The translations under genes were made by a program, and so were the position numbers. A DNA stretch of 56,050 bases from Macrostomum lignano. Lineage: Eukaryota. Shown one piece after another: positions 2,281-43,267 of the stretch. The stretch spans positions 1 through 56,050 of the forward strand of contig NIVC01003557.1 in NCBI GenBank assembly GCA_002269645.1. The letters run 5' to 3'. The first letter of the stretch is position 1, and every line of letters starts with the position of its first letter. The notes below the pieces were generated by a model. It worked only from the letters and a program-made list of their open reading frames with translations, had not been told where the DNA came from and made no database searches.

Positions 2281-2439
2281 GATGGGCCTTTCACAGAAAG
2301 TAGCACGAGTAGCACCCGGATGCTACTCAGACACCCCAGATGCTAATCTGACACCACCGATGCTACTCAGTGCCGTAGCCATTCATGCACCACCTTCCGT
2401 CACCACTGCCTGTCCTTCGCTGCTCCTCTTAACCTCTCG

Positions 2440-2900: not shown

Positions 2901-3145
2901 CTCCACCATTCCCTGTCACCTTCTAGCTAATGCAAAGCTGAAAACTGACTCTCGAATTTCACGCTCATGAAATCTACCAAAGTGCAATTCGTGGCAAACG
3001 AAAACTAATTCGGGGCGCGCGACGGTCTCTGCCTCCATCAGCTTTGAATTCAAAGCTTCGTGACCGAACGGGGTTTCTCAAGATTTAGGCAAATGATTTA
3101 AAATCAATAGAAAAAGCAGAAAACCAAACTGAGCGACGAACAGAA

Positions 3146-4039
3146 ATGATTTATTACTATCCTGCGTGGCTGCTCCACGCTGCACTGGGGGCGACTTTAT
3201 TCGCCTGCCTGTTGGCGTCCTTCCTGTGCCACCTGCATCGGAAGCGACGTTCCCGGAGACTGTTGGCCAACCGGACCGGCTGCCTGCTCAGCGGCCTCGT
3301 GGCAGTTTGCGGTCGAGACCAAGATCAACCTACAATTCGTGCAATAAGCCATCAGTCAGAGAAGCCACAACAGCAACAACAGCAGCAAAAGAAGCGTCTT
3401 CGAGCGAGCACCACGAGGCAGCCTCATCGGACGAGAAATCAGCGATCCCGCAGTAGGCTTCGATCCAGCTCCACGGTCGCTTTGCCGCCTGCTGGGGATC
3501 ACGCGGTGGGGTGAGCACATCGATTTCAGCCACGCTTTTGAAGACAACCCAGACGCTACAAAGACACCTAACATGCTACTGCAGACACCCCACATGCTAC
3601 TCAGACACCCCAGATGCTACTCAGACACCCCATATGCTACTCAGACACCCCATATGCTACTCAGGCACCCCAGCTGCTACTCAGACACCCCAGCTGCTAC
3701 TCATACACCCCAGCTGCTACTCAGATACCCAACAGGCTACTCAGACACCCCAGATGTTACCTAGCACCCAAAGGTTTCTCAGACACTCCACGTGCTGCTC
3801 AGACATCCCGGATGTTACCTGCTAGTCATGCACGCCCCGACGCCATTCCAGCTTTTCAACAGTTGGTGTCTCAGCCTCGCCGACGGTCAGATCAGCACCG
3901 CATCCGTCCCCAAGAAGTGCCTCTTGCAGCGCCGTCTCAGGGAGCGGCGGTGGTGTCTGCAACTACGGGTTTAACATGGCTCTTGGAAACTTTAAAGGCG
4001 GCGGGCGGCGGGTGCGGTAGAAGCAGCGGATTCAAGTGA
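3146..4039 (+). CDS. Possible 2-exon orphan single-pass membrane protein (3146-3510 + 3827-4039)
   Basis: An N-terminal hydrophobic stretch (AWLLHAALGATLFACLLASFLC) is followed by the basic RKRRSRR. The phase-2 donor GG|GTGAGC and acceptor CTGCTAG are compatible, and the intron is filled by a 20-bp tandem repeat like the other introns here. No family recognised. Confidence 0.35.
3555..3815. repeat. 20-bp minisatellite (GATGCTACTCAGACACCCCA); short related copy at ~2315-2390
   Basis: Tandem degenerate units seen directly. Confidence 0.9.
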
Positions 4040-18576: not shown

Positions 18577-21500
18577 TTAAAAGGCCGTGTCGTTTTCGGG
18601 TAGCATTAGTTCCAAGAATTTCTGAAAAAAAATTATACACATGTATTTACTTCAGCTCACATATGCGAAAAGTTATAATATAAAAAATATTTTTTCACTC
18701 TTGCAGATCACTCTAAACCGATTTTCACACTTGCATATCGCTTCAAACCGTCTAGTTTCTACTAACTGGCAAACTTTGCGACTTTCTACCCCCACCACGT
18801 TGTCGATGACCCTTTTCTTCATGCCCCACCACCTTTCTATCCCTCTCCACTGACTGTCTATGGCCCTTATCTCTCACACCCACCACCCCTCTATCCCTCC
18901 CCACTGACTGTCTATGGCCCTTATCTCTCACACCCACCACCTCTCTATCCCTCTCCATTGACTGTCTATGGCCCTTATCTCTCACACCCACCACCCCTCT
19001 ATCCCTCCCCACTGACTGTCTATGGCCCTTATCTCTCACACCCACCACCTTTCTATCCCTCCCCAATGACTGTCCATGGCCCTTATATCTCACACCCACC
19101 ACCTCTCTATCCCTCTTCACTGACTGTCTATGGTCCTTAACTCTCACACCCCCTACGAGAAGCTTCCGCACTTGCCTCCACACTTACCCTGGCAAACTCA
19201 GGCCCAGTGGCGAGGGTCTCCCCGCCAGGCAGCAGCCGCACGCCGTCAACGGTGGCTTCAACGTTTTCAACAGCATCAGCACCGTCGCTGCACCCGCCGT
19301 CACCCGACTGTTGCGTTAGCAAGCGGAACTGACGACGCACAGGCGGAACTGAAGCTGCAGCAGCTCCAGCCGCCTCTACGTGCAGCTCAATCAGGCGAGC
19401 AGTTGTTAGCAGTAGTCCGGAGTTCGAATCCACGGCTACAATTTGCTCGCTTGGACAGCATCTACCAAGTTGATGAAGCAACGCGGCAGCGGACGTCGCT
19501 GAACTGTCGGGCACGTCGACATCGACAATGGCAATCGGCGTCGATTTTGTTGACGACAGAGCCGACTGCATCCACGATGACAGTTGAACAGGTGTAAACT
19601 CTTTGCGACGCACTACAAAAAAATCGATTTTTAGGAATTTTTTAGATAATTTCAAATACCAATCTTGCTTAAGTTCTTTGACAGAACTCTTAACTAAATT
19701 AACGCTAGTATTCAACCATGGAAATTTTCGTTCCACATGGAGAAGGAGAAAATCTTTTGCAAAAATCTTTAGGAGACGATTAGGGAGTTTTTCTGGATTT
19801 TTTCTGGAAATTTCTGGAGCAATCCCTGAAAAATTCTGGGAAATCCCTGAGGAGTTCTAGGGGAATCCCTGAGGAATTCTGGGGGAATCCCTGAGGAATT
19901 TTGGGGGAATCCCTGAGGAATTCTGGGGGAATCCCTGAGGAATTCTGGGGAATCCCTGAGGAATTCTGGGGAATCCCTGAGGAATTCTGGGAAATCCCTG
20001 AGGACTTTTTGGGAAATTCCAAGAGACTTCCGGGGGAATCGCTAAGAAATTTTTAGAAAATCGTTAGAGGAAGCCCTGGATTCTTCCATAAAATTTGCTG
20101 CGTAATATCGTCAACAAATCAACTAAAAATTAGAATATAGAAAAATAACTCACGACAGGTGCCGAGCAGGCAGCCCAGCGGCAGGGTGACGGCCATCCCT
20201 GGCCGACGCTTAATCAGCCGCTTGAACTCCCTCCTGGCCCACTGCTGGGCGTCGCCACCGTCGTTGTCCGGCCAGGCGACTCCGAGAGCGTTGCCGGCGG
20301 GAACCGTGGCTCGAAGACGCCAGCCGTTGCCTTGGGCCGCAGATTCTGACGTTCGCAACGGCAGATTTTCGGCGTACAAACGCAGATTGCGCAACAGTTG
20401 GAACCGGTCGATGCGAACACCGCTCGATGGCGCGTCAGACTGGGGCGTCAGCGTGGCCAGCAGGCGGACGAAGAACGCCGGGTCGTAGCAGAGGTCCAGG
20501 CGACCGAGTGCGAGCGACATCTCAGAGATGTGCAGCGGTGGCGGCTGGGCAGACCTGGGTGATGTAAATTCAGCGATGGATTATTTAAGATTAGCGATGG
20601 ATTATGTAAGATCAGCGATGGATTATCTAAGATTAGCGACATATTATCGAAGATTAGCGATGGATTATCTAAGATTAGCGATGGATTATGTAAGATTAGC
20701 GATGGATTATCTAAGATTAGCGACATATTATCGAAGATTAGCGATGGATTATCTAAGATTAGCGATGGATTATGTAAGATTAGCGATGGATTATCTAAGA
20801 TTAGCGATGGATTATCTAAGATAAGCGATGGATTATGTAAGATTAGCGATGGATTATATAAGATTAGCGATGAATTATCGAAGATTAGCGATGGATTATA
20901 TAAGATTAGCGATGGATTATGTAGAATTAGCGATAGATTATCGAAGATTAGCAGACTCACGCTCCATCATCCTCGACTTCAGCAGAACCGGCAGCAGCCA
21001 TGCAGACTTTCAAATCCGCTCCTAAAAGACGACCTTCACCAAGGACGTCAGCTTTAGGCCTTGCCTTCAAGGACAGCGGCACCCTGAACTGGTCGGGCGC
21101 CTGAGGACACGACTGGTCCACCTGCAAGCGGCCCAGCTTGATCTGGAATCGAACTGGACGATTAACTTCTCCTTTGTCAGGCTGTTGCGAAAATTCGACT
21201 TGCCCGACAAATCCAGGAAGGCAGCGTCGGTAGAGACGTCGCGATTTCGGCTGTAACATCGTCATGCCGACCTTCATACTACTGCTAATACTACTGCTAG
21301 AAGTAATAGCGTTGTCATTGACCAATTGTTCAAAACAGACTCTCCATTGGTCGGAATCGACCAGCTCCACTGACGATTGATTTGACAATACCGACGAGAC
21401 CGGCGTAGACAGCCAGCGTCGGTAAAGCCGTTCGACAGCAGCCGCTGCGTCGGGTTTCAATCGCACGAAACGACGCTTGACGCCAGTTAATTTGGTTTTC

Positions 21501-24500
21501 AACCATACGGGACCGACGTTGTCGATGCTGAGGTTGGCAACGTTTCTACAGCCTCTGCCGGAGCCTCTGCAGCGCTGGCAAGCTGCGCCGTCAGGCGTCG
21601 TTGTCATTGTTGTTAGTAGGTTCGAATCCAAACGTAACAGAATGCCAATGCTGTGCAGGTCGACGCGGAACTTCCACGCTTGGCTTCCGTTTCCGGTTCC
21701 GGTTCCATTCTCGCGTCCAGTTCCGTCACCTGACCCACTTCCGGTTCGATTCTCACGTCCAGTTCCGTCACCTGACCCACTTCCGGTTCGATTCTCACGT
21801 CCAGTTCCGTCACCTGACTCACTTCCGGTTCGATTCTCGCGTCTAGTTCCGTCACCTGACCCACTTCCGGTTTGATTCTCGCGTCTAGTTCCGTCACCTG
21901 ACCCACTTCCGGTTTGATTCTCGCGTCCAGTTCCGTCACCTGACCCACTTCCGGTTCGATTCTCGCGTCTAGTTCCGTCACCTGACCCACTTCCGGTTCG
22001 ATTCTCGCGTCTAGTTCCGTCACCTGACCCACTTCCGGTTCGATTCTCGCGTCTAGTTCCGTCAACTGACACGCCTCTGGTTCGAGTTTCTCGAACTGTA
22101 TTTCCATTCGAACCACTTCCGGTACGATTTTTCCGTCCATTTCCGTTACTAGAAATAGTTCCGGTTTGATTTTTGCACTTACTAGCGTCATCGGAACCAT
22201 TTCCAGTTGGTTTCTCTTGTCCAGAATCGTTACCATTAAAGCTATTAGGTGGTTCATGTTCAGTTTCATTTCCTGCGACATGTACACGTCCGATATCGTC
22301 ATTTTTAGTACTTGGTCTACTTCCGGCAAACGCTTGACGCAAATTTTCGACTAACTGAGCGATCGCAGCGGCTACGGCAGGCGACACGACCAAGCAGATT
22401 CTGTGAAGCGGACAGGACAGCACTACGGATGTAACATCGGCAGACCAGTTGGCCGCAAGTTGGAATCGCGGATAAGTGCAGGCCGACTGATAGCTATCAG
22501 ATGAAGGAGTCTCCAGAATCAGCAGAGGCTCTTCAATGAGTTCCGCGCTTGTGCTGGTCAGCGAGGCGCTGGCGGATGGGCGTTCGAAGGTCGCAGAGCA
22601 GGAGGCCTGCAGTTAATATGGGAATGTGTAGACAAAGATGCAAGGATACAGAAAGGACACACAGCACAGATGCAGACACAAGGACACAAAGAAAATATAA
22701 CGCACGAGGACACAGATATAAAGAGACAAGGACACAAGGACACAAAAACCAAAACACAACAAGAGGACACAAGAACACAGACACGAGGATACAAAAACAC
22801 AGAGAGAGACAATTGCCAGGTGCAAAGCCAAACAGACATGCTGACAGAACACTACGGCTAAAAGAGATGCTGGCCCACACTCACATGTTCAAAGCCAACT
22901 GTGAGATGGTCAAGGCTAAACGCAACGCTGCCTGCGCCAGTGGGTGAGTCGCCAATCACCATGGAAACGGTATTTGTAGCGACAGTCAAGCTGCCAAACT
23001 GCAAATTAGCAATGTCATTTAGGAATTTATTATAACTTCGCAGAACACTGTTGGCAAAATAGTCGCGCGCGCAACATACTACTAGTAATTAAAATGTCAG
23101 TAGTATTTTATATTAACAGTCACAACAAATCAGATTAAATCAGTTTAAAGCACATACTATAATAACTAAATGGGCCACTCAGCACATTTGCGTGCCAGCT
23201 ACTTTCAGTTCAGTAGTAAGTCAAACTAAAGCATTCTAATGCATTTTTAAAGCCATTTAAACTCATTTATTGGCTCTTACCCCCCTCAGCTTAAAGCCCA
23301 AACCGCGCCTTTCCACACTACCCCACCCCTCCGCCCGCCCCAATTTTTATTGCCTTTCTCGGAATTCCAGCCTAAAGCTGCCATGTACATTTCAGTGGAC
23401 TGGGCAATGTACATTGTGGCAGAACCAATTAGCAAGTTGTTTACGCTTGCAAGCTTTGGCTTCTAAACTTATCAAAGTGATTTCAGCTGCCTTTAAATTT
23501 ATAAAACAGCTTATGTATTCTTCTTTGCTACTGAACTGAAAGTAGAAAGCTGTTTTACTTAGTAAATGTGCCTGCTTCAGTTGTCCATCTAGATAATTCT
23601 ATTATCTGTGGTTTATGGTAAAAAGATTTACACTACACTCAACAAGAGTTTTTATTAGTCTTCAATACTCAGTAGGCATGCAAAATTATAGAAAGAAACA
23701 TTCAACACCATTAACACGGTGTGGGTATTGAGTAGATAAATTTGACTAGCGCCAAACAAGCAGAGCTTGAGTTTTGTAATTAGAATATTTCTATCTATCA
23801 TTACCATCTTAGATGAGGCTGGAGACGCTGAGGTGGTGGCTGCAATATTGGCGACTTGTGTTGTAAAAAAACTTGGCAGAGAAATGAAAATATTTAAAAA
23901 ATAAGACAAAAAACAGAATAACTACTCATATTAAGGCAAGTGTGCGTGCAATTTTGTTTTAATAATAACTAATCTACATTGAATTACTTTTTCAAACTCA
24001 TTTAAACTACTTCAAGTAGTTTGATTTCTTTTTAAATAATAATTCAAGGCAAAGGTTTGGACAAAAAAGACTCATTAAAATAACAACTGCTCTCTCACCA
24101 GCGGTCTGTTGAGGCCTTAGCAACGGTTGCCAAGTGTTGACAATGGAAACAGCGCTACTCACAGCGGAAGGAGCAATTCTAATATTGAGTCGTGATTTGA
24201 AGATCAAAGTAGGAGCAGGCAGCGATAGACAAATAGTCTCGGTGCTGAGCAGCTGCGAGTGTTGGGGCAACAGGTTCAACAGTTAAACAAAATATTTTCA
24301 TTGTCCGAACAAAATCTCACAGTTCGGCATCAAAATCTCACGCTAGATTCGAATTTGGGATAGAATTCTCACCCTGTGATTAAAATCTCACCCTTTGATC
24401 AAAATCTCACCCTGTGATCAAAATCTCATTATATGTTCTAAATCTCACTCTAAGCGCAAAATCTCACCATGTGATCGAAATCTCACAACTAGATCACAGT

Positions 24501-25059
24501 TAAGGATAAAAATTTCACCCCACATCCCCAGTGAAAATCTAGCCAATGGGGAACTTTGCAAGCTAACAAACTTTTGACCTTCAAACGCTCACCTCAACAC
24601 CATCAGCAATCGCAGAATCCTGCAGTGTCATTGGCTTCCGAAAGCCATCCTTATAAAAGGTCAAACAAAGATCAGTCAATTCTGTCTCGCTAAATGAGCC
24701 GTTGAAACCGCCAAGTTGAAAGCAAAATGCGTTGCCGCCGCCGCCGCCGCTAGCAGTTTGGTTGCCATGGTTACTATTTGGCTGGGGGCGAGCATTTTGA
24801 AAAATTTGCACACGCAACGCCGAAGTTTCAACGCTCAGCGCGGGCGAAAATCGCTGCTCTGGCGAGGCTGCCGCGGCTGCGACCGACGATGGCTCTGGAG
24901 AAAAGAATAGAAAAAATACTACTCTTACTACTCAATAAAAGTTTCTCAGTAAATAGCTGTAAATAGGAGAAAATAGCTGTATCCTTGCTATAAGCAAAGA
25001 AAAAAATGAAAAAAGACAGACAGACTAACAGACAGAAAGACAGACAAGACAGACAGATA

Positions 25060-25094
<35 letters not shown>

Positions 25095-25219
25095 AAGACA
25101 GACAGACAGACAGACTAACAGACAGACAGATAAGACAGACAAATACACAGACAGACAGACAGATAAGACAGACAGACAGACAGATAAGAAAGACAAATAC
25201 ACAGACAGACAGACAGATA

Positions 25220-25279
<60 letters not shown>

Positions 25280-28200
25280 GGACAGGCTACAGGCAGACAG
25301 AACCTACCAGTTTCCCGAGGCTTGGCTTGGTTGCTAGGCGCGGGCTGACCCTGAGCAGCCATCGTTGCCATGCAGTCGCTAAGCAGAGGCAGCTCATCAG
25401 GCCACAGCCGCAATTGGCAGGCTGCCAACCTAACTGTCAGCGAGCGAGGCAAACTGCGAATCGATAATAGATCGGTAGGTTTGGAGTTCGAGTCCGACTT
25501 CGAGACGCTGCGACTGAAGATGCTGGAAGATGCGAAAAAAGATAATGGCACTGTTGGGGAGTACACGCGTACTTTTCGCTTACGTGTACAGGTAGGTACT
25601 CAGGACTAATCTGGCTTCAGCTTCGGTCATCCGCTTAAACGCAGTCTAAATACCTCTCAGATTCGATCTAGATACCCTCAGATACGATCTAGATACCCTC
25701 TCAGATACCATCTAGATACCCTCAGATGCAATCTAGATACCCTCTCAGCTGCAAGCTAGATACCCTAAGATGCAATCTAGATACCCTCAGATGCAATCTA
25801 GATACCCTAAGATGCAATCTAGATACCCTAAGATGTAATCTAGATACCCTCAGATGCAATCTAGATACCCTAAGATGTAATCTAGATACCCTCAGATGCA
25901 ATCTAGATACCCTCCCATGCGCAATCTAGATACCCTAAGATACGATTTAGATACCCTCCCAGGTGCAATCTAGATACCCTCAGGTGCAATCTCGATACCC
26001 TCTTAGATACAATCTCGATACCCTATCAGATATAATCTAGATACCCTCAGAGACAATCTCGATACCCTCAGTTGCAATCTCGATACCCTCAGTTGCAATC
26101 TCGATACCCTCAGTTGCAATCTCGATACCCTCAGTTGCAATCTAGATTCTCTTTCAGACGCAATCTATATACCCTCTCAGATACAATCTAGATACCCACT
26201 CAAAACTAGCCAAGCCTCACCTCCATCTGTCCAGCGGCTCTCTCTGGACGCCGCCCTCGCCCTCGCTCTCGTCATGCGCCACGGCCTCAACGCCGGCGTC
26301 AGCCAGCCGAAGCTGCCAGATCGTTGACGGTCGTTGCCGACGCAGCACCAAGCCGACGGAGCAGGCTCCCACGGACAGGTCGTAGGCCCACCTGGTGCCC
26401 GCAGGCCGGCCCAGCTGATCAACTCCATCAACGGAATCCTCGCCGCTCTCGGCGATCTCCGACGCCGCTAGCGAAGCAATCGACAGCAAATCGGATCGAT
26501 CGGCTACAAGCCTTAGTCCGGGCGTTTCCATGGCAACAGCCAGCCAAGCTTGGCAACAATGCTCGTCAGAAATGGTGGCATCCGAGCACCGCAGCCTGGC
26601 AATCTGAGCAGTGAGCACCGGCTGCTCATTACCGATTTTATTACCGTCGCTCTCGCCGTAAAACCGAAGCAGTCTCGAACTATTTCCGAGTTGGTTGCTA
26701 CCCTGCCCGGCAACCACAAGATCGCCAACGCGGCTGCCCGCGGCCAGCTGACAGACCGAGGCCGACAAGCCAGAGATTCGAACCCGCAACTCATCAGCCA
26801 GTAGAGCCATGTCGGATGATGACGTCATCACCGCATCCTCTGGGGTGAACAGCTCCTTCAAAGCCGGCCGACTGTAGCTGAACTCGTAGAATTGCACGGC
26901 ATCAGTTGTGTCATCGGAATTTGACTGAGCAGAGGAGCTGGTGCTGCTCAACAGCAGGCTGCCCAAGTCTGCGTACAGGGCGCGGTTTCCGGCGCCGCCA
27001 CGGAGCGGCAGGATGAGTCGAGGCGCGCTGATCTCAGCCCGGGCTGTCAGGCCGCCGGCTTGGCGAATCTGGCAGATTTTGAAAATTCAACAAAAAATTC
27101 ATCGACATACTGTATCTGAGGAAAAAATTATTTTTATAAACTGACCTCAGTCTGGGCCGATTCAAGTACGTCGCCAGCTTGCCAGTTTAAGCGAGATTGC
27201 AGCTGCTCCAGCGGCTCTTGAATTGAAGTGCTGAACTCCTGGGATTTTTTTAAATGACTGGATGTTCACATATTAAATAATTTTAAAGTGGGTCATCTAG
27301 GGTCTCGACGGTAGGAAGGCCACTCAAGTTCATTTAAGGTCGGTCACGGGGCTGCATGCTCATTCAAGGTCATCTAGTGTTGCAAGGGTAGGATGGTCAT
27401 TCAAGGTCATCTGGGGTCGCGAGTGTTGGATGGTCATTCAAGGTCATCTAGTGTTGCAAGGGTTGGATGGTCATTCAAGGTCATCTAGGGTCGCGAGTGT
27501 TGGATGGTCATTCAAGGTCATCTAGTGTTGCAAGGGTTGGATGGTCATTCAAAGTCATCTAGGGTCGCGAGTGTTGGATGCTCGTTCAAGGTCATCTAGT
27601 GTTGCAAGGGTTGGATGGTCATTCAGGGTCATCTGAGGTCGCGAGGGTTGGATGGCCATTCAAGGTCATCTGGGGTCGCGAGGGTTGTATGGCCATTCAA
27701 GGTCATCTAAGGTCGCGAATGCTGTTGATTAAAGCATAAAGTTTTGTTTAACAAGCTCAGGTGAACCAGGTTCATAATAGTAGGCATATTAATTACCTTC
27801 AGCCCAGCCATCAGCTCGGGCAAAAGTACAAGCTGCACTTTATTCAATTTGCAGTCAATATCCAATCGGCTTGGGCCGGGACCAGCTGGCCAACTGGTAA
27901 TCCGAATTCTGGCCACAGGCTCGTCAGGCAAATCGGCTAATAACGGCTTGGCGTACAGTCGACGCCTTTGCCGATTGGGCACCAGACAGGATCGGCCAGT
28001 GTCCGCTTCTAAACCGGTGCACTCCAGCTGTAGTTCGCGTTTCAGCCGGTACTCCGTCATAGCACCACCAGTCGATGCCGGCCGCTCGTAGGTGGCCGAA
28101 GCTTCGATGCGCAGCTCGGACAGCCGGCACACGCACAGGATCTGGTGCTCGGCGGAGGCCAAATCCAGCCTGGCATTGGTGAGCCGCAGCTCCAGGCTGA

Positions 28201-34200: not shown

Positions 34201-37200
34201 AGTGTCTGTCCCAGTGTCTGTCCCAGTGTCTGTCCCAGTGTCTGTCCTAGTGTCTGTCCCAGTGTCTGTCCTAGCGTCTGTTTTAGTGTCCGTCTTAGTG
34301 TCTGTCCCAGTGTCTGTCCCAGTGTCTGTCCCAGTGTCTGTCCTAGTGTCTGTCCCAGTGTCTGTCCCAGTGTCTGTCCCAGTGTCTGTCCCAGTGTCTG
34401 TCCCAGTGTCTGTCCCAGTGTCTGTCCTAGTGTATCAATGTGTCTGTCTGTCTGTATCAGCGGTCTGTCTGTCAGTCAGTCAGCAGAGCAGAACTCACGG
34501 CAAGCACAGGCGGCGGCAGCGGCAGGTCGGCAAGCCGGTTGCACACGTCTTCGGCCAGGTGCAGACAGCCAGCCAGACAGTCGGGCTGCAGACAGGCTCC
34601 CAGAGCGTCCAGTTGAGTTTCCGCCGACATTCGTTCGGGCGACACCACGGCCGACAGGCTGAGAAAACCGAAATCTTCGTCCGGGATTTTATAGGGCACC
34701 CGTTTCAGACGCTTGACAATTTTTGCGCCTTGTGTCTCAAATCCCGAATCGGCAACTTCGACCGCATCGAGCTGACTGCTAAGCAGGCGAAGAGGTCGAC
34801 TGCGATCCAGCTTGGAGCCCGCGCCCACCGGCTGCGGGTGAGCCAAATCCTGGTGGGATGCGGAGGGTGTCTGAGGATTACAGCAGGTGAATCATGAGGA
34901 TTACAGCAGGTGAATCATGAGGATTACAGCAGGTGAATCATGAGGATTACAGCAGGTGAATCATGAGGATTACAGCAGGTGAATCATGAGGATTACAGCA
35001 GGTGAGTCATGAGGATTACAGCAGGTGAATCATGAGGATTACAGCAGGTGAGTCATGAGGATTACAGCAGGTGAATCATGAGGATTACAGCAGGTGAATC
35101 ATGAGGATTACAGCAGGTGAATCATGAGGATTACAGCAGGTGAATCATGAGGATTACAGCAGGTGAATCATGAGGATTACAGCAGGTGAATCATGAGGAT
35201 TACAGCAGGTGAATCATGAGGATTACAGCAGGTGAATCATGAGGATTACAGCAGGTGAATCATGAGGATTACAGCAGGTGAATCATGAGGATTACAGCAG
35301 GTGAATCATGAGGATTACAGCAGGTGAATTATGAGGATTACAGCAGGTGAATCATGAGGATTACAGCAGGTGAATCATGAGGATTACAGCAGGTGAATTA
35401 TGAGGATTACAGCAGGTGAATCATGAGGATTACAGCAGGTGAGTCATGAGGATTACAGCAGGTGAATCATGAGGATTACAGCAGGTGAGTCATGAGGATT
35501 ACAGCAGGTGAATCATGAGGATTACAGCAGGTGAATCATGAGGATTACAGCAGGTGAGTCATGAGGATTACAGCAGATGAATCATGAGGATTACAGCAGG
35601 TAAATCATGAGGATTACAGCAGGTGAATCATGAGGATTACAGCAGGTGAATCATGAGGATTACAGCAGGTGAATCATGAGGATTACAGCAGGTAAATCAT
35701 GAGACTTACAGCAGGCACAGATATTAAGTATTAAAAGAAAATGTTTTTGAGATTTAAGTCTCACCTCAACCGACAGCAAGTCCACAAACAGTCTGGCCTC
35801 AAGCCAGTTAGGCTGTTTCACCGCATTCAATCGCAGCCTTTCAATCAGAGCCTTCAACTTCGTGGTCTCCATGGTAACAACCAACTTGTTAACTACCGCG
35901 TAAGCCTGCCATTTTAGCGGGCTCTCAATCTTGTTGGGATTTTCTTGCTCATGCTGTTTGGAGAAATTCGGCAGAACAGAAGGCACGCCCAGCAGACTGG
36001 TTAGAGATGGCCCGCTCCACTTGGCTGCCCCGGCAACGGTTGCTAGGGCCTCAGGACTCAGCCGTAGTTGAACTATTTGGGTTTTGAAGACTAACGACAT
36101 TCTGCGGAATAGTTTAGTAAAATAGTAGTCACCGTTAGATTGATATAGCTAATGGTCTAACATTAAAAACCGTTCTAATCCAAATACCCTATTATAAGCT
36201 ACCAATGTCCAATTATAGGCTACCAATGCCCAATTATAAGCTACCAATGCCCAATTATAGGCTACCAATGCCCAATTATAAGCTACCAATGCCCAATTAT
36301 AAGCTACCAATGTCCAATTATAGGCTACCAATGCCCAATTATAAGCTACCAATGCCCAATTATAGGCTACCAATGCCCAATTATAAGCTACCAATGCCCA
36401 ATTATAGGCTACCAATGCCCAATTATAAGCTACCAATGCCCAATTATAAGCTACCAATGCCCAATTATAAGCTACCAATGCCCAATTATAGGCTACCAAT
36501 GCCCAATTATAAGCTACCAATGCCCAATTATAAGCTACCAATGCCCAATTATAAGCTACCAATGCCCAATTATAAGCTACCAATGCCCAATTATAAGCTA
36601 CCAATGCCCAATTATAAGCTACCAATGCCCAATTATAAGCTACCAATGCCCAATTATAAGCTACCAATGCCCAATTATAAGCTACCAATGCCCAATTATA
36701 AGCTACCAATACCAATTATAAGCTACCAATACTCAATTATAAGCTACCAATACTCAATTATAAGCTACCAATACTCAATTATAAGCTACCAGTACTCAAT
36801 TATAAGCTACCAATACTCAATTATAAGCTACCAATACTCAATTATAAGCTACCAGTACTCAATTATAAGCTACCAATACTCAATTATAAGCTACCAATAC
36901 TCAATTATAAGCTACCAGTACTCAATTATAAGCTACCAATACTCAATTATAAGCTACCAGTACTCAATTATAAGCTACCAATATCTCTATAATAAGATAC
37001 CAAAATCGCATCTCACTACTCACTTTGGCAAATCCATAGGCGCATTAACGCCAAAACCGCAGGCGATTGCGGCATCAACAATGGGCTTATCGATGCACTG
37101 ATTGGCAACAATTCTCAGCCTAAGCGTCAGTTGGTGCACTGAGTTGGGCGCAGTTTCAGGCGCCAGGCACAACTGTCTGAGATGCTCATCAACCAGATTG

Positions 37201-39081
37201 GACTCTGCAGGGCCGGTCTTCAGCCACAGCAGTTCCACCTCGTCCATCAGGCAGGTGAGCCCCCGGTCCGACGACAGAGGTCCGGTGGGCAGGTGAAACG
37301 ACAAGCCGTCCAGGTGGCCGCGGAATCGGTGCCGATCTTTTTCGGCAGTGCCGCCAGATCGACCAGCGCCGTTGCGACCGACGCCGCGACGTGTGAGAAA
37401 GCGCAGAGTTTTGAGCAGCTCCTCGTCAAGTTCCGGCTCAGCTTCCTCGGCCTCATCGGCGGCCGAGGATGAGGATGACACTTGGAAAAAGTTGGCTAGG
37501 CGATTTGCCGTGGACTGTTGGGTATTGATGGAGGGGTAGAGGGTGCGTGTAAAAATCAAGGCGTCAGCCGGCCGGCCTCTCTGCGACGGAGAGGCGACTG
37601 TTGCGCGTCACATGAGTTATAGAATTGTAAAAGAGCCGCGAAAAAAGTCCTCCTAATAATCGTTGTGTTGGCGCTTAACTTTCTACTAACTTAGTAGGCT
37701 TAATAAGAGTTCAATAGGCTACACCACAGGTACTAGAATAACTAGATGGGCACTCACGCATATATACTCAGTATAACAGCTTTCTACCTACTTTCAGTTC
37801 AGTAGCAAAGAAGAATACATAAGCTGTTTTATAAAATTCAAGGCAGCTGAAATCACTTTGATAAATTTAGAAGCCCAAACTTCCAGGCGTAAACACCTTG
37901 CTATTTGGTTCAGCAGAAATGTACATTGGCCAGTCCACTGAAATGTACATGGCAGCTTTAGGCTGGAATTCCGAGAAAGGCAATAAAAATTGGGGCGATG
38001 CGGGGGGGGGTAGTGTGGTAGGCGCGGTTGGAGGGTTTAAGCTGGAGATAAGAGGCAATAAATGAGCCTTGGCTTGGCTTTAAAAATAAATTAAAATGCT
38101 TCTGTTTAACTTACTACTGAACTGAAAGTAGCTTACATGCAAATGTGCTGAGTGGCCCATCTAGTTGATGATGGAATCCAGTGTTTCTACAGCGCCTCTA
38201 GCACGCCTCAAATACGACTCTCTCAGTCGCAGACAATAAAACGCTTCAATGTGATCCTTCGGCGACTTTTTGACGACTCTGAGTCGTCTAGAGTTACTTC
38301 TCTCTTATCATACTTGTTACCTGCAACGACTCTGAAAACTGGCCCCTGAGCATGCACACACGATTAAAACGGTACCTAGGGCTAAGAAGCGTCACATACT
38401 ACTTGCGTTGCCCCAAAGTTGTTTCAGATTCGTTGCAGGTTGCAGAGTTGTAACTGAGGCGTTCCAGAGCCGCTGTAAAATCGCTGAGTTGCGTCCAAAG
38501 CGCACCAGTGTCACTCTATGAATTTTAGAATTGCATTTCGCATTTAGTAGAAAGTTAAGCGCTAACACAACGACTGGTGGACGACTTTTTCGCAGCTATT
38601 TTATGGTTTTGCAACTTAGGTGATCCGCTCTCAATACAGTCGTTTGAGTTGTCAAAAAAACAAGAGTTACCCATCGTACATCGTATAGAGACATCGGCTC
38701 TAACTTTCCCTAATATCTCACACTTTGCATATCATATTATTGTACACGACTAGCCCCATGCCCAATTGTTGTGTACAAGCCCGCCCAATTCCGGAAATTA
38801 GAGATTTTTGCATTAAAACTCACAACGCAATGCACAATGCGACAGGCTCCAATATCCAGGATGTAGGGCGATTTGTCTGGTCGGCAGAGTTTAACAAATT
38901 TTGACTGGCCGTTTGGCAGCTTGGTGTGACAACAGCGGCAGGCCTCTGTGGCAACCAGCTGCCTGCCATCGTAGCCGAGTGCCGACAGGGAGCCTAGCGA
39001 AGCTTTCAGGCTGTGGAGGATAGATAGAATGAATGTTTGTGTGTGGCATGGAGCACAGACAGACAGACAGACAGATAGATG

Positions 39082-39121
<40 letters not shown>

Positions 39122-39164
39122 CACACATAGATAAATAGATAGATAGATAGATAGATAGATAGAC

Positions 39165-39224
<60 letters not shown>

Positions 39225-42200
39225 TCATCGCAGTCAGCAGTTTTTCAAGGTAAAAGCGAAACTTAGTGAGTTTATTTGAGACCACTGTGTACTTTTATCT
39301 GTTATCTGTTAAGCACATGCGGGTTCGCCCTCTCTGTCTTATAAGCGTACTCACCTGTACTTCTTAGCGATCCGCTTTAAACTGGCTTCAATTTTATCCA
39401 ATTTCACGTCTAAGATAGAAGTCCGACTGCAATGTAGAAAAAAGTCGTAAAATTCTGCTACATTCTTTTAGAACATCAGGAAATTGTCAAAAACATTACA
39501 TAGTGAGTGTTCTGGCGCACTTTTTTAGCGAAAATTATTTTTGTGCTTTCAAATCCATTACAGATTTCATTATCAAGGTATTAATTCCTAATTAGAGATC
39601 CAGTTATTCAAGGTATGAATCCCTAATTAGAGATCCCATTATTCAAGTTATTAATCCCTAATTAGAGATCCCATCAACAAAGTATGAATCCCTAATTAGA
39701 GATCCCATCAACAAAGTATGAATCCCTAATTAGAGATCCCATCATCAAAGTATGAATCTCTAATTAGAGATCCCATCATCAAAGTATGAATCTCTAATTA
39801 GAGATCCCATCATCAAAGTATGAATCTCTAATTAGAGATCCCATCATCAAAGTATGAATCCCTAATTAGAGATCCCATCATCAAAGTATGAATCCCTAAT
39901 TAGAGATCCCATCAACAAAGTATGAATCCCTAATTAGAGATCCCATCATCAAAGTATGAATCCCTAATTAGAGATCCCATCATCAAAGTATGAATCTCTA
40001 ATTAGAGATCCAACAAGGTCATGTGAAGCGACTGTGAAGCGAAAATCACCAAAAAGTACATCCCCTGAGTACTGCTCACCCTTCGCGCAGTGCAAAGCAG
40101 ATTTGATCAGCGTCCAGCATTACTTTCGCATTAAACTGGTTAGCAGCGGCACCAGCAGAGTCGCTATCTCTATTGCGACTAAAGCCAGCTGCACTGGAAT
40201 CAGCGCCTCTGGCATTGTTGGTGGCTGCGCGAACATCTTGACGGAACAATCTCTGCGATATAGATATAGTGTATAGCACATAAATGGTTAGAAAAATCAC
40301 ACTAAATTTTATTTCTTGTAAAATAAAAAACACTTACATTAAGTCTATCAACTTGGCCAGTAAGCAAGTCGTATTGTTTACTAGTCATGTCGAATTTGAA
40401 ACCGCGAATAAAAATTTTTAGTACCGCTCTTGGTTGGGCGTTTGTTTCTATTAGACTGACGTTCAGACTGATTGATAGAGGCTGAAGCACTGCAATGTAG
40501 CGTTTGGTGACCAGTTTTCGCTGTTAGTTGGGAGCGAGAGTACATTGAGGTAAGGGTGTTGGGGGCTAAACTGGAGTGAGTGTACGTTGGGGCAGGGGAT
40601 TGAAGCCTAGAGGGGAGTGAGTGTACATTGGGGCAGGGGTTGGGGCCTTGATAAGAGCGAGTGTACATTGGGGCAGGTGGTTGGGGCCTAGACGGGAGTG
40701 AGTGCACATTGTGAAAGGGGGTTGGGGCCTAGACTGGAGTGAGTGTACATTAGGGCAGGGGATTGAAGCCTAGACGGGAGTGGGAGTGAGTGTACATTGG
40801 GGCAGGGGATTGGGGCCTAGACTCGAGTGAGTGTATATTGGGGCAGGGGGTTGGGGCCTAGACTGGAGTGAGATTACATTGGGGCAGGGGGTTGGGGCCT
40901 AGACTGGAGTGAGATTACATTGGGGCAGGGGGTTGGGGCCTAGACTGGAGTGAGATTACATTGGGGCAGGGGGTTGGGGCCTAGACGGGAGTGAGTGTAC
41001 ATTAAAGTTTTTGAAAGGGATACAAATCGCGAATAATTTATTTACCGTGATGAAATTTCAAACTGTGACCGGTAAATACTTCCGACATTGCTGCTTTAAT
41101 ATCGTCCTGAAATACAATTAGAAATATTTCCTTTTCCGTTAAGTAAATTCAGTCTTTCTAGAACATAAAAGTAAAAAATACAAAACTAAACAACTGACAT
41201 GCTGACTTTGCTGGCTCAGCGGAGGCGACAAGTGCATTGTCAATGAGTGCAATTCGACCGACTGGAATGAATGGTTTTGAAAATTGAAATTTACGAGCTG
41301 TCATTCGAAGTTACAAATTATTGGCAATACATTAATGGCGAAAAGCTCCACTACACCTTATCTGTAAGCTCCACTCTCCCTCATCTGTATTCTGTAAGCT
41401 CCACTCTCCCTTATCTGTAAGCTCCACTCTCCCTCATCTGTAAGCTGAACTCTCCCTTATCTGCAAGCTCCATTCTCAATAATCTGTAAGCTCCACTCTC
41501 CCTTATCTGTAAGCTCCACTCTCCCTTATCTGTAAGCTCCACTCTCCCTTATCTGTAAGCTGAACTCTCCCTTATCTGTAAGCTCCACTCTCCCTTATCT
41601 GTAAGCTCCACTCTCCCTTATCTGTAAGCTAAACTCTCCTTTATCTGTAAGCTGAACTCTCCCTTATCTGTAAGCTCCACTCTCCCTCATCTGTAAGCTG
41701 AACTCTCCCTTATCTGTAAGCTCCACTCTCCCTCATCTGTAAGCTGAACTCTCCCTTATCTGCAAGCTCCATTCTCAATAATCTGTAAGCTCCACTCTCC
41801 CTTATCTGTAAGCTCCACTCTCCCTTATCTGTAAGCTCCACTCTCCCTTATCTGTAAGCTCCACTCTCCCTTATCTGTAAGCTCCACTCTCCCTTATCTG
41901 TAAGCTCCACTCTCCCTTATCTGTAAGCTCCACTCTCCCTTATCTGTAAGCTAAACTCTACTTTATCTGTAAGCTCCACTCTCCCTTATCTGTAAGCTCC
42001 ACTCTCCCTCATCTGTAAGCTGAACTCTCCCTTATCTGTAAGCTCCACTCTCCCTCATCTGTAAGCTGAACTCTCCTTTATCTGTAAGCTCCACTCTCCC
42101 TCATCTGTAAGCTAAACTCTCCCTTATCTGTAAGCTCCACTCTCCCTTATCTGCAAGCTCCATTCTCAATTATCTGTAAGCTCCACTCTCCCTTATCTGT

Positions 42201-43267
42201 AAGCTCCACTCTCCCTCATCTGTAAGCTGAACTCTCCCTTATCTGCAAGCTCCATTCTCAATAATCTGTAAGCTCCACTCTCCCTTATCTGTAAGCTGAA
42301 CTCTCCCTTATCTGTAAGCTCCACTCTCCCTCATCTGTAAGCTCCACTCTCCCTTATTTGTAAGCTCCACTCTCCCTCATCTGTAAGCTGAACTCTCCCT
42401 TATCTGTAAGCTCCACTCTCCCTTATCTGTAAGCTCCACTCTCCCTTATCTGTAAGCTCCACTCTCCCTTATCTGTAAGCTGAACTCTCCCTTATCTGCA
42501 AGCTCCATTCTCAATAATCTGTAAGCTCCACTCTCCCTTACCCTGGTATCTGTAAGCTCCACTCTCCCTTATCTGTAAGCTCCACTCTCTTTAACCTGCA
42601 AGCCTCATCATTCCTTAACTATTAAAACGCCCATATACACGAACAAGCAGATATTTACCCTTTGATCTCCGTGGAAAAGCAGCTTCTCAAACGCCACACC
42701 AGCTAATAACGGTTTGGATTCGTCAGACTTGTCTTCATAGCAAACATGCAACTGGTGCACCTCAATGCATTTTATTAGCTCTGGCATTTTCTGAAGCCAA
42801 GACAACCAATTTTGAGGCTTTTGTTGCTGTTGCGAACTCTCCGATTCATCAGATTTGACAGGCAATACTGCAGAGTGAGGCAATTTCGATATTGAAGACT
42901 CTCGACGCCTAACTAATAGGTGAACATCCCGCATGACTAACTCCAGTCCTTGTCCGGGAAACAGCCGATTCTTTGAGCCAAACCAGGTAACTGCATAGTT
43001 CAAAATTAGCTTGCCGGTGGCTTGAAAACTCTTCCTATTGAGTTCGATACTTCCAATATTGTAGTGGACTAAATCAAGTCCCGGTGCCACTTGGGCCAGT
43101 CTCTGGCGGACATCCTGATTTGCCTGATCAGCATTGGATAAGTTGAGAAGCAGGAATTTACCTGGGTTTTGGTGGACAGAAGCAATGGGTGAAAATAATT
43201 GTAGAAAATAGTTGACTTTGATCTTTAATTTAAATGATTCACTTTTAGAGTTTATAGAGTGCATCAT
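18577..43267 (-). CDS. VPS13: Divergent, shortened VPS13-family bridge-like lipid transfer protein, ~2384 aa, 20 exons
   Basis: Phase-consistent GT-AG model: 42659-43267, 40338-40520, 40080-40252, 39355-39426, 38824-39010, 37024-37514, 35765-36101, 34499-34849, 27797-28267, 27146-27238, 26221-27068, 25308-25522, 24593-24894, 24099-24252, 23805-23854, 22885-22998, 20961-22606, 20154-20554, 19188-19600, 18577-18621 (7155 nt). Motifs: Chorein_N-like [12 protein letters not shown] and [24 protein letters not shown]; [11 protein letters not shown]...[11 protein letters not shown]; RBG repeat [11 protein letters not shown]...[12 protein letters not shown]; C-terminal [37 protein letters not shown]; PH-like [18 protein letters not shown] at ~18414-18419. 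The start ATG (43267) and the last exon are provisional. Confidence 0.85.
18800..19150. repeat. Second array of the 54-bp minisatellite, in the last VPS13-like intron
   Basis: Same unit and orientation as 17560-18165. Confidence 0.93.
19790..20045. repeat. ~21-22-bp minisatellite (GAATCCCTGAGGAATTCTGGGG)
   Basis: Tandem units, intronic. Confidence 0.9.
20573..20950. repeat. 21-bp minisatellite (TTAGCGATGGATTATCTAAGA) filling a whole intron
   Basis: About 18 units between the donor at 20960 and the acceptor at 20555. Confidence 0.95.
21690..22075 (-). repeat. Coding 42-bp tandem repeat ([14 protein letters not shown])n inside the large VPS13-like exon
   Basis: 8-9 units; the reading frame stays open through the array. 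Confidence 0.9.
23158..23601 (+). mobile_element. ~440-bp MITE, copy 2 (diverged)
   Basis: Colinear with 13492-13935 (TGGGCCACTCAGCACATTTGC..., GGAATTCCAGCCTAAAGCTGCCATGTACATTTCAGTGGAC...). Confidence 0.8.
25006..25280. repeat. (GACA)n microsatellite, intronic
   Basis: Seen directly. Confidence 0.97.
25650..26200. repeat. 21-bp minisatellite (ATCTAGATACCCTCAGATGCA)
   Basis: About 25 tandem units, intronic. Confidence 0.93.
27290..27720. repeat. 37-bp minisatellite (GGATGGTCATTCAAGGTCATCTAGGGTCGCGAGTGTT)
   Basis: About 11 units, intronic. Confidence 0.92.
28575..28920 (+). repeat. 17-bp perfect tandem array (GTCTTAATTTATTTGCA) x20 at the LINE 5' junction
   Basis: 20 units (one lacks an A) plus a final GTCTTAA. 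The first 7 nt of the unit equal the 3' end of the TSD. Confidence 0.97.
28927..31370 (+). mobile_element. 5'-truncated RTE-clade non-LTR retrotransposon, young insertion
   Basis: 10-bp TSD TCTGTCTTAA at 28572-28581 and 31371-31380. Short 3' UTR ending in (GTT)n. Truncated within the APE endonuclease. Inserted antisense in a VPS13-like intron. Confidence 0.92.
28984..31320 (+). CDS. LINE ORF2: APE endonuclease C-terminus plus intact reverse transcriptase
   Basis: ANTRF...QLDHVLV...SDHRLL (APE); [57 protein letters not shown] and LAGHVIR (RT). No stops or frameshifts; the frame is open from 28927. Confidence 0.97.
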   Translation: MVSANTRFRKSPGRLATFVGCKRRRRNARGRNATRRLAQLDHVLVRFRERRRVTNCHTITPLALRSDHRLLICDLRLRDPLYRPPKRPPRRYYRALRDAETRRRFAGAFVTALGDKRGGAEYAEVSAAVRAAAEQAVPLMRPAQRGQPVWQDDPAIDEAREDLERLRLSGRPTREAEEALAAVYLQRQQSAVDDAIQAVIAAGPDARGRVAWSAINTLTGRKRRIALNLAGDTPDERRNELREFFAAIVNAPPPPLPENLRLPPETPLPAEESFNVAPVSTADVVKFARQSPGGKALGPDEVPTEALRIHCVATEVARVMNRVLFGEVAPNEWTTAHIVAIPKKPGTTKLEEHRGICLQSCAAKLFNRMLLSRLQTVLDPYLRPEQNGFRPHRGTVTQILALRRVIEEARIRQLTLILIFVDFRKAFDSVVRDALPEVLRAYNVPELLISAVMALYHGTTAAVSTPDGLSDFFETSSGVLQGDTLAPFLFILVLDWVLRTALPSNDDGFLLRRRVGRRQSERRLSVLGYADDLALLSSTVEGAQRQLDRLVAVAASVGLVVNTQKTVVLCVPDDTEAAIFCRGADGQASELSRCQQFVYLGGLVPDVREDLRRRRGLAWAAFRSIRSVLQSEALPDRQRAALFQAVIETVLLYNAETWTLTDSLEAQVDAAHAGLLRAAFKIGNERVTNTALYHRAGLARPSDLLRRRRLQLAGHVIRAEAYCPEPVQEVLLLTLQAPYRRGQAKTRRYVDCLLADAGAPDSAGGAAFVRAQALKRAI
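34877..35715. repeat. 23-bp minisatellite (GAGGATTACAGCAGGTGAATCAT) filling an intron
   Basis: About 36 nearly identical units. Confidence 0.97.
36190..36982. repeat. 21-bp minisatellite (CCAATTATAAGCTACCAATGC), two variant domains
   Basis: About 37 units; the variant changes near 36710. Confidence 0.97.
37732..38165 (-). mobile_element. ~440-bp MITE, copy 3 (inverted)
   Basis: Reverse complement of 13492-13935; ends ACTAGAATAACTAGATGGG and CCCATCTAGT. Confidence 0.8.
39058..39224. repeat. (GATA)n/(GACA)n microsatellite
   Basis: Seen directly. Confidence 0.97.
39580..40012. repeat. 34-bp minisatellite (AATCCCTAATTAGAGATCCCATCATCAAAGTATG)
   Basis: About 12 units, intronic. Confidence 0.95.
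40560..41002. repeat. ~41-bp G-rich minisatellite (GGGGCAGGGGGTTGGGGCCTAGACTGGAGTGAGTGTACATT)
   Basis: About 11 units, intronic. Confidence 0.92.
41350..42590. repeat. 23-bp minisatellite (ATCTGTAAGCTCCACTCTCCCTT)
   Basis: About 54 units with recurring variants, intronic. Confidence 0.97.

What the first reader, a model, noticed from the sequence alone, without database searches (positions are those of the whole stretch)
18577..43267. Compact VPS13 paralog in which the VAB adaptor domain seems replaced by a repeat loop and ATG2_C is missing
The 20-exon model gives ~2384 aa, versus roughly 3000-4400 aa for canonical VPS13 proteins. Chorein_N, RBG-type repeats, the C-terminal GIxxL / LQxD block and a PH-like end are recognisable. 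Where VPS13s carry the six-repeat VAB (adaptor-binding) domain, just before [12 protein letters not shown], this protein has only a ~200-aa Gly/Ser/Asn-rich disordered segment with 14-aa repeats. After the LGCLLGTC motif (equivalent to LGSLDxLGNP) the chain goes almost directly into the PH-like domain, without the Gly-rich amphipathic ATG2_C helices. This would be an adaptor-independent lipid bridge intermediate between VPS13 and the ATG2/SHIP164 architecture, possibly a lineage-specific fifth VPS13-like class.
Basis: partly seen in the sequence, partly recalled or inferred. Interest (0 to 1): 0.75.

Follow-up and report, generated by a model that had tools for sequence, protein, structure and literature searches.

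The report
Divergent flatworm VPS13-like gene lacking VAB
This is a real 20-exon gene of the flatworm Macrostomum lignano encoding a very divergent VPS13-type lipid-bridge protein that has a low-complexity repeat linker where VPS13 proteins carry their adaptor-binding (VAB) domain, and no recognisable ATG_C helices, although both gene ends remain uncertain.

Summary
The gene is real. On the minus strand I rebuilt a 20-exon, 2398-codon open model (43267 to 18577), with GT-AG at every junction and consistent phases. UniProt fragment models from Macrostomum lignano match it at about 99-100% per exon and confirm most junctions.

It belongs to the VPS13 family but is extremely diverged. Pfam gives only a weak VPS13_N hit (E=1e-3). 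Tests against PDB-validated human VPS13C and VPS13A give three weak, colinear signals. The strongest is the post-linker region against the VPS13A post-VAB region (z=6.6, 0 of 1000 shuffles). ATG2A controls are not significant.

The VAB domain is absent. Its site is a 201-aa Gly/Thr/Arg/Ser/Asn linker holding a 42-bp x 9.3 tandem array, inside one uninterrupted exon.

No canonical ATG_C is detectable, and there is too little room for ATG_C plus PH.

Not confirmed:
- The ATG at 43267. A database model joins an upstream exon, absent from the window, to an acceptor at 43162.
- Chorein_N.
- The PH-like end. AlphaFold2 pLDDT was 35.
- LGCLLGTC as the equivalent of LGxDxLGNP.

Verdict: a new variant of a known kind, of moderate interest. 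Whether it is a working adaptor-independent bridge or a decaying duplicate is open.

The parts
42659..43267 (-). Exon 1 as modelled (aa 1-203). The true exon probably begins at 43161, after the acceptor CAG at 43162. Codons 1-36 from the ATG at 43267 are doubtful.
   Evidence: ORF and splice-site inspection. P0002 joins another upstream exon to KFLLLNLS. The coding-potential segment starts at 43189.
42674..42850 (-). aa 140-198, the only Pfam-detectable piece. It matches VPS13_N profile positions 123-187 (the '...HVCYEDK...' strand).
   Evidence: Pfam PF12624, E=0.0011-0.0026. phmmer against VPS13C 171-225 gives E=9e-4, with 1 of 500 shuffles reaching it.
41199..41261 (-). Exon 2 (21 aa), optional and uncertain.
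   Evidence: Phase-compatible AG...GTCAGT and used in P0002. Spacing to VPS13C fits slightly better without it.
40338..40520 (-). Exon 3.
40080..40252 (-). Exon 4.
   Evidence: 100% match in P0002.
39355..39426 (-). Exon 5 (24 aa, [23 protein letters not shown]).
   Evidence: Found through P0002. Splice sites TTGCAG|...|GTGAGT.
38824..39010 (-). Exon 6.
37024..37580 (-). Exon 7. P0002 uses an alternative acceptor at about 37514.
35765..36101 (-). Exon 8.
34499..34870 (-). Exon 9. Acceptors at 34870 and 34849 are both in phase.
   Evidence: P0003.
27797..28261 (-). Exon 10. P0003 starts it 2 codons earlier.
27146..27238 (-). Exon 11.
26221..27068 (-). Exon 12. With exons 10-11 it carries aa 967-1078, which resemble the duplicated VPS13C '...NFLNNFQTAKE...DLKAPVIVIPQ' region.
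   Evidence: The junction after a 77-nt intron is confirmed by P0003. phmmer against VPS13C gives E=0.0033.
25308..25522 (-). Exon 13.
24593..24894 (-). Exon 14.
24163..24252 (-). Exon 15 (contains [12 protein letters not shown]). P0003 extends it and adds a 12-aa micro-exon before exon 16.
22885..22998 (-). Exon 16.
20961..22606 (-). Exon 17, one uninterrupted 548-codon exon. In order it holds the last pre-linker strands and helix, the linker, and the start of the VPS13 post-VAB region.
21689..22291 (-). Low-complexity linker (aa 1666-1866) at the position of the VAB domain.
   Evidence: Composition. It lies immediately before the region that aligns to the VPS13A/C post-VAB start.
21697..22085 (-). 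42-bp x 9.3 tandem array (14-aa [14 protein letters not shown] units in the exon's frame). It is also open in a second frame.
   Evidence: TRF: 95% matches, no indels. Alternative-frame reading in P0003/P0004.
20154..20554 (-). Exon 18, ending ...[10 protein letters not shown]. With the 3' part of exon 17 (20961-21688) it forms aa 1867-2242, homologous to VPS13 RBG11-12.
   Evidence: Global alignment z=6.6 against VPS13A and z=3.5 against VPS13C. ATG2A and other VPS13C regions are not significant. Two-sequence HMM E=0.0018.
19188..19612 (-). Exon 19 (C-terminal domain of unverified fold). Phase-compatible alternative CAG acceptors at 19792-19846 would add up to 78 aa.
18577..18621 (-). Exon 20 ([14 protein letters not shown], stop TAA).
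   Evidence: Strong donor GTAAGT at 19187 and T-rich CAG acceptor.
28984..31320 (+). Non-LTR retrotransposon reverse-transcriptase ORF inside intron 9. It is not part of the protein.
   Evidence: RVT_1 E=9e-29.

Best explanation
The locus encodes a highly diverged, lineage-restricted paralog of the VPS13A/C type of bridge-like lipid-transfer protein in Macrostomum lignano.

Shown:
- An intact ~2400-codon, 20-exon gene.
- Colinear, weak but specific similarity to VPS13 in the N-terminal region, the mid region and the post-VAB region.
- Complete absence of the ~650-aa VAB domain. Its insertion point (the loop between RBG10 and RBG11 in VPS13A numbering) is a 201-aa hydrophilic low-complexity linker with a young 14-aa tandem repeat.
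- No detectable ATG_C. After the last VPS13-alignable block only 156-234 residues remain, against about 370 in VPS13A/C.

Inferred:
- The protein still forms a continuous hydrophobic groove of roughly 10-12 RBG units and moves lipids between apposed membranes as VPS13 does.
- It cannot use VAB-dependent adaptors, and it lacks the Gly-rich amphipathic ATG_C helices. Its C-terminal targeting must therefore rely on the unclassified terminal domain or on other partners.
- It probably arose from a duplicated VPS13 gene that lost accessory domains and evolved fast.
For: - Gene model. All junctions are GT-AG, phases are consistent and there are no stops. P0002 and P0003/P0004 confirm the junctions.
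- Organism: the UniProt entries matching at about 99-100% are from M. lignano.
- Family, N-terminal signal: Pfam VPS13_N E=1e-3 at a colinear position. VPS13C 1-450 against our 1-430 gives E=9e-4 with 1 of 500 shuffles reaching it, and our 126-430 against VPS13C 100-460 gives z=2.8.
- Family, mid signal: E=0.0033.
- Family, C-terminal signal: HMM E=0.0018 with 0 of 2000 shuffles reaching it. Global alignment z=6.6 against VPS13A and z=3.5 against VPS13C, with six negative-control VPS13C regions and ATG2A non-significant.
- Local best hits fall in the expected colinear order.
- UniProt names the fragments 'VPS13_mid_rpt' and 'VPS13_C domain-containing'.
- Reference sequences were validated against PDB entries 9yqp, 9yg5 and 8kbx.
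- VAB absence: one continuous exon, linker composition, tandem array, and no VAB signal in the protein or in six frames.
- ATG_C absence. Intron 18 is 541 nt and holds a 22-nt x 9.5 tandem array.
- Not an ordinary ortholog: a 242-aa query found only itself among 1.84e9 representatives.
- The VAB as an insert between RBG10 and RBG11: PMC7613979.
Against: - Every similarity signal is individually weak (bit scores near 0-17), and Pfam's gathering cut-off of 80 is far from met.
- Chorein_N, the pre-VAB end and PH gave no significant signal.
- AlphaFold2 without an alignment was uninformative (mean pLDDT 36 and 35). The groove and the RBG count (crude strand count) are therefore inferred, not shown.
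- There is no transcript evidence here.
- The 5' exon is missing from the window, and the exon 19 acceptor and the reading frame of the repeat are ambiguous.
- With such divergence, failure to detect ATG_C or PH by sequence is weak evidence of absence. Only the shortage of residues is firm.
- Function is untested. The gene could be a duplicate on its way to decay.
Confidence: 0.72

Rival explanations
1. It is a decaying or non-functional duplicate of a canonical VPS13 gene. M. lignano is a hidden tetraploid. On this reading, domain losses, extreme divergence and a repeat expansion inside an exon are signs of relaxed selection, and no working lipid bridge is made.
For: - Extreme divergence: only itself was found in 1.84e9 representatives.
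- A young 95%-identical tandem array sits inside the coding exon.
- That array is open in two frames and is read in a different frame in the database models.
- Introns are loaded with repeats and a retrotransposon.
- Recent whole-genome duplication (PMC5704211).
- A second, diverged copy exists (P0001).
Against: About 2400 codons in 20 exons stay open, with every splice site canonical. The VPS13-like blocks are retained in colinear order. At least two near-identical annotated copies keep the same exon structure. A dead gene this diverged would be expected to carry stops and broken splice sites.
Confidence: 0.18
2. It is an ordinary full-length VPS13, and the missing VAB and ATG_C are artefacts of assembly or of the gene model (collapsed repeats, missed exons).
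For: - The 5' exon is indeed missing from the window.
- Tandem arrays sit exactly at both 'missing domain' sites, and such sites are where assemblies can collapse.
- The exon 19 boundary is ambiguous.
Against: - The VAB site lies inside one continuous open exon, and the independent UniProt models P0003 and P0004 have the same arrangement.
- A collapse would have to remove ~2 kb of non-repetitive coding sequence cleanly and in frame.
- No VAB- or ATG_C-like coding sequence is found in any frame of the 56-kb window.
- The retained regions are far too diverged for a canonical ortholog.
Confidence: 0.05
3. It is a diverged ATG2 or BLTP3/SHIP164 family member. These naturally lack a VAB domain, so it would not be a VPS13 derivative.
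For: It has no VAB. Its size (~2400 aa) is within the ATG2 range of some invertebrates (from general knowledge). ATG2 shares its terminal RBG domains with VPS13 (PMC7613979).
Against: Every ATG2A comparison was non-significant where VPS13 comparisons were significant. The N-terminal test gave E=0.047 at a non-colinear position, the C-terminal phmmer test gave no hit, and global z was 0.7 and 0.08. No ATG_C was found, although ATG_C defines ATG2. BLTP3 was not tested because no validated reference sequence was available.
Confidence: 0.05

Closest known systems
[quoted passage not shown]
   Same: Colinear similarity in the N-terminal region (the 'YED' strand), the mid 'AP-x-I-x-I-P' junction region and, most clearly, the RBG11-12 region that follows the VAB domain (LHSxGxxL, GxVW, LxGxQ[IV]EF, LQVD[NQ], I[QS]EMxL...D..F). 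Total length is about that of VPS13A minus VAB minus ATG_C.
   Different: It has no VAB domain and no detectable ATG_C. The PH-like end and Chorein_N are unverifiable. Similarity is near the detection limit, whereas true orthologs across animals are readily found.
Plant VPS13X (At3g50380; Levine 2022, PMC7613979)
   Same: A short, highly divergent VPS13 paralog with a reduced or altered set of accessory domains and fewer RBG units.
   Different: VPS13X keeps its VAB repeats, which is what identifies it as a VPS13, and loses the PH domain. Here the VAB is what is lost.
ATG2
   Same: A rod-like RBG protein without a VAB domain. Its terminal RBG domains are related to those of VPS13.
   Different: ATG2 is defined by ATG_C (and ATG2_CAD), and none was detected. 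All ATG2A similarity tests were non-significant.

Membership tests
VPS13 | N-terminal Chorein_N segment (first ~100-120 aa) | tested here: inconclusive
   There is no Pfam match to profile positions 1-122, and no significant alignment of aa 1-125 (or the P0002-type N-terminus) to VPS13C 1-100. The true first exon is probably outside the window.
VPS13 | VPS13_N / mid-region beta-groove sequence (RBG1-10) | tested here: inconclusive
   Weak colinear signals: PF12624 E=1e-3, but 17 bits against a cut-off of 80; VPS13C N-terminus E=9e-4; z=2.8; mid region E=0.0033. A crude strand count suggests about 8-10 units before the linker. AlphaFold2 was uninformative.
VPS13 | VAB domain (six beta-repeats inserted between RBG10 and RBG11) | tested here: not met
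   The site is a 201-aa low-complexity linker inside one continuous exon. No VAB similarity appears in the protein or in six frames of the window.
VPS13 | Post-VAB region (RBG11-12; old Pfam VPS13_C / SHR-BD end) | tested here: met
   Two-sequence HMM E=0.0018 with 0 of 2000 shuffles reaching it. Global alignment z=6.6 (VPS13A) and z=3.5 (VPS13C), with controls non-significant. UniProt names P0003 and P0004 'VPS13_C domain-containing'. The current Pfam gives no hit.
VPS13 | ATG_C amphipathic Gly-rich helices | tested here: not met
   There is no Pfam hit and no similarity to VPS13C/A ATG_C in the protein, in the possible exon 19 extension or in six frames. Only 156-234 residues remain after the last aligned block.
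VPS13 | C-terminal PH-like domain | tested here: inconclusive
   No sequence similarity (z=0.1 and -1.1). The AlphaFold2 single-sequence model has pLDDT 35.
ATG2 | ATG_C and ATG2-type N- and C-terminal RBG sequence | tested here: not met
   ATG2A (validated) against our N-terminus, C-terminus and full length: E=0.047-0.11 at non-colinear positions or no hit, z=0.08-0.7.
BLTP3 / SHIP164 | Six RBG units with a C-terminal coiled coil and BLTP3-type N-terminus | not tested
The Pfam scan returned no BLTP3 family.

The most novel reading that the evidence does not exclude
Macrostomum carries a functional, lineage-specific VPS13-derived lipid bridge that has dispensed with both the VAB adaptor-binding domain and the ATG_C membrane-binding helices. 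A rapidly evolving repeat linker sits in the RBG10-11 loop. This would be an animal VPS13 that is targeted by a mechanism different from all described family members.
Probability: 0.3. Interest if true: 0.6.

Novelty: new variant of a known kind. Interest (0 to 1): 0.45.

Why it matters
The VAB repeats are treated as the feature that definitively marks a protein as VPS13 (PMC7613979), and they mediate organelle-specific recruitment. A naturally occurring, intact VPS13 rod without VAB and ATG_C would show how much of the accessory apparatus is dispensable, and it would make a minimal natural scaffold for study. M. lignano is transgenic-tractable (PMC7053086), so localisation and knock-down are feasible. 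If the gene is only a decaying duplicate, the locus instead illustrates domain loss after whole-genome duplication.

Tried and rejected
- The search for homologous proteins failed three times. The two working searches returned only M. lignano fragment models.
- The look-up of encoding contigs found neither P0001 nor P0002.
- phmmer of our protein against PDB found nothing relevant.
- Sliding-window Smith-Waterman against VPS13C and ATG2A was at noise level.
- Two AlphaFold2 single-sequence runs gave mean pLDDT 36 and 35. I therefore ran no fold search.
- I searched for an upstream Chorein_N exon with human and yeast N-terminal peptides and with the P0002 N-terminus. Nothing turned up except a 6-aa 'ADYLPL' match at ~50119, which is probably chance.
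- The ORF piece 39967-40119, initially taken as coding, was rejected as an intronic repeat.
- The possible exon 19 extension shows no similarity to the last VPS13 RBG12 strands or to ATG_C.
- Minus-strand ORFs downstream of 18577 are repeats or other genes, not further VPS13 exons.
- Supplementary files of two VPS13 papers held no sequences.
Full report
**Observation.** The finding lies on the minus strand. Stop-to-stop ORFs and splice-site inspection gave a first 17-exon model. Three short phase-compatible exons were then added. The final model has 20 exons, 7197 nt and 2398 codons with no internal stop, running from 43267 to 18577.
- Donors are almost all GTGAGT or GTAAGT, and 15 of the first 16 acceptors are CAG.
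- The large introns hold microsatellite arrays and a plus-strand non-LTR reverse-transcriptase ORF at 28984-31320 (RVT_1 E=9e-29).

**Organism and independent models.** The few database relatives are all UniProt entries of Macrostomum lignano.
- P0002 (A0A1I8JMG8, 'VPS13_mid_rpt domain-containing protein') is 100% identical to exons 2 and 4-7.
- P0003 (A0A1I8IN26) and P0004 (A0A1I8JLW3), both 'VPS13_C domain-containing protein', cover exons 9-18 at about 99% identity and confirm those junctions, including a 77-nt intron. They differ from the window at roughly ten residues.
- P0001 is a frame-scrambled model of a diverged second copy. That fits the hidden tetraploidy of this species (PMC5704211).

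**How diverged it is.** Pfam detects only VPS13_N: E=0.0011, 17 bits against a cut-off of 80, with aa 140-198 matching profile positions 123-187. Nothing is found for VAB/SHR-BD, VPS13_C, ATG_C or PH, nor in P0003 and P0004. phmmer of our protein against all PDB sequences, which include full-length VPS13C and ATG2A, finds nothing relevant. A 242-aa piece of exon 17, covering the region that is conserved among VPS13s, found only its own UniProt model among 1.84 billion representative proteins. This is not an ordinary ortholog.

**Targeted homology tests.** I wrote human VPS13C and ATG2A from memory and validated both against PDB. VPS13C scored 8464 bits over 1-3753 against 9yqp_B. ATG2A scored 4466 bits over 1-1938 against 8kbx_B. 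The VPS13A C-terminal sequence was transcribed from the alignment to 9yg5_B. With HMMER filters off and shuffle controls:
- N-terminal region: VPS13C 1-450 against our 1-430 gives E=9e-4, with 1 of 500 shuffles reaching it, matching VPS13C 171-225 to our 143-196. Our 126-430 against VPS13C 100-460 gives z=2.8.
- Mid region: our 967-1078 matches both copies of the duplicated VPS13C region, E=0.0033.
- Post-linker region: a VPS13C+VPS13A HMM gives E=0.0018, with 0 of 2000 shuffles reaching it, at our 2006-2063 opposite '...FLSGIQIEFKQ...LQVDNQL'.
- Post-linker region, end-gap-free global alignment: our 1867-2242 against the region between the VAB end and the ATG_C start gives z=6.6 for VPS13A (0 of 1000) and z=3.5 for VPS13C. 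Six other VPS13C regions and the equivalent ATG2A region are non-significant.
- Restricted local alignments fall in the expected colinear order: LHSIGILL opposite LHSLGLSL, GPVW opposite [12 protein letters not shown]...D..F opposite IQEMALKID..F.
- All ATG2A tests are non-significant.

The combination of three independent colinear signals is good evidence for VPS13-family descent, closest to the A/C type.

**The VAB site.** In VPS13 the VAB repeats are an insert in the loop between RBG10 and RBG11 (PMC7613979). In VPS13C they end just before '...EITLSLHSLGLSLV'. In our protein the equivalent strand, [12 protein letters not shown], is preceded by 201 residues (aa 1666-1866; 21689-22291).
- These residues are 26% Gly, 13% Thr, 13% Arg, 12% Ser and 10% Asn, with 4% hydrophobic residues against 32% in the rest of the protein.
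- They include a 42-bp x 9.3 tandem array, 95% identical and without indels.
- All of this lies in one uninterrupted 548-codon exon, and the independent models P0003 and P0004 have the same arrangement.
- No VAB-like sequence occurs in the protein or in any frame of the 56-kb window.

The VAB domain is therefore truly absent at this locus.

One caveat concerns the array. It is open in two frames. The UniProt models read it as ([14 protein letters not shown])n by way of a 13-nt and a 47-nt GT-AG 'intron'. A 13-nt intron is not credible, so for the window sequence the [14 protein letters not shown] frame is the parsimonious reading. AlphaFold2 gave only that alternative repeat reading high confidence, which is a known tendency with perfect repeats.

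**The C-terminal end.** After exon 18 (...[10 protein letters not shown]) comes a 541-nt intron that holds a 22-nt x 9.5 tandem array. Exon 19 and a 14-aa exon 20 follow. Several in-phase CAG acceptors (19792-19846) could lengthen exon 19 by up to 78 aa.
- Neither the 156-aa tail nor the extension resembles ATG_C, PH or the last RBG12 strands.
- AlphaFold2 of the long version had pLDDT 35.
- The firm point is arithmetic. VPS13A/C have about 370 residues after this point and our protein has 156-234. ATG_C, normally the best-conserved part of the family, leaves no trace.

**The N-terminal end.** The sequence CAG|GT at 43162 has a good pyrimidine tract. P0002 joins '...YRCGADYLPLNSVANESLR' to KFLLLNLS at that point. 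This peptide resembles the 'LNRFLGDYVENL' start of VPS13 by eye, but it is not encoded anywhere in the window. The ATG at 43267 and the first 36 codons are therefore doubtful, and the gene probably starts beyond the window or in unassembled sequence. Chorein_N is not verifiable.

**Architecture.** The length before the linker is 1665 aa, against about 1940 aa for a VPS13A-like pre-VAB part. A crude amphipathic-strand count calibrated on VPS13C and ATG2A suggests about 8-10 RBG units before the linker and 2 after it. The protein therefore looks like a VPS13A-type rod stripped of VAB and ATG_C, not an intermediate towards ATG2 or SHIP164.

**Interpretation.**
- Most likely (0.72): a lineage-restricted, fast-evolving VPS13 paralog that still forms a lipid-conducting groove but cannot use VAB-dependent adaptors. 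The groove and the transport function are inferred from family membership, not shown.
- Main rival (0.18): a duplicate under relaxed selection that is decaying. The intact 2400-codon ORF, canonical splice sites and retained colinear blocks argue against a dead gene.
- Assembly or model artefact (0.05) and ATG2/BLTP3 membership (0.05) are unlikely, for the reasons given above.

**Novelty.** The fragments are already auto-named as VPS13-domain proteins in UniProt. No description of a VAB-less animal VPS13 was found in the searched literature. I rate it a new variant of a known kind, with moderate interest (0.45).

Noticed in passing
window 28984-31320 (+), inside intron 9: Intact 778-aa ORF of a non-LTR retrotransposon with a reverse-transcriptase domain (RVT_1 E=9e-29). 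It is GC-rich compared with its surroundings.
   Followed up: partly
window ~31400-34500 and many other introns (e.g. 36150-36715, 38900-39290, 41400-42570): Kilobase-scale microsatellite and minisatellite arrays fill the introns. AT skew reaches -0.63 at 32-34 kb. Several arrays are open in all three frames and mimic ORFs.
   Followed up: no
window 21697-22085: The 42-bp coding tandem array is open in two frames. UniProt models A0A1I8IN26 and A0A1I8JLW3 read the other frame, ([14 protein letters not shown])n, through a 13-nt and a 47-nt GT-AG gap. AlphaFold2 single-sequence prediction gave that reading pLDDT 84-91 as stacked beta-hairpins, while everything else was below 50.
   Followed up: partly
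window 7422-8430 (-): Two ORFs match Menorin/FAM151 (PF10223, E=7e-29 and 2e-14). This is a separate gene downstream on the same strand.
   Followed up: no
window 46567-48819 (-): ORFs of another gene upstream on the same strand, one carrying a long (AEAKAAAE)n repeat followed by a coiled-coil-like tail. There is no Pfam match. If the true first exon of the VPS13-like gene lies beyond the window, this gene would be nested in its first intron.
   Followed up: no
window ~50119 (-): The peptide '...EEAMLLALLLKADYLPLSP' shares ADYLPL with the N-terminus of P0002 and vaguely resembles a Chorein_N start. The surrounding DNA looks like the antisense strand of an acidic coding region, so the match is probably chance.
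   Followed up: partly
window 19812-20015 (intron 18): A 22-nt x 9.5 tandem array lies directly upstream of exon 19. It contains several in-phase CAG acceptors, which makes the exon 19 start ambiguous.
   Followed up: yes
P0001 (UniProt A0A1I8JP50) against window 24831-28176: A UniProt model named 'SKA2 domain-containing protein' is a frame-scrambled prediction over a diverged second copy of this same gene. It is both evidence of a homeologous copy and a misannotation.
   Followed up: partly
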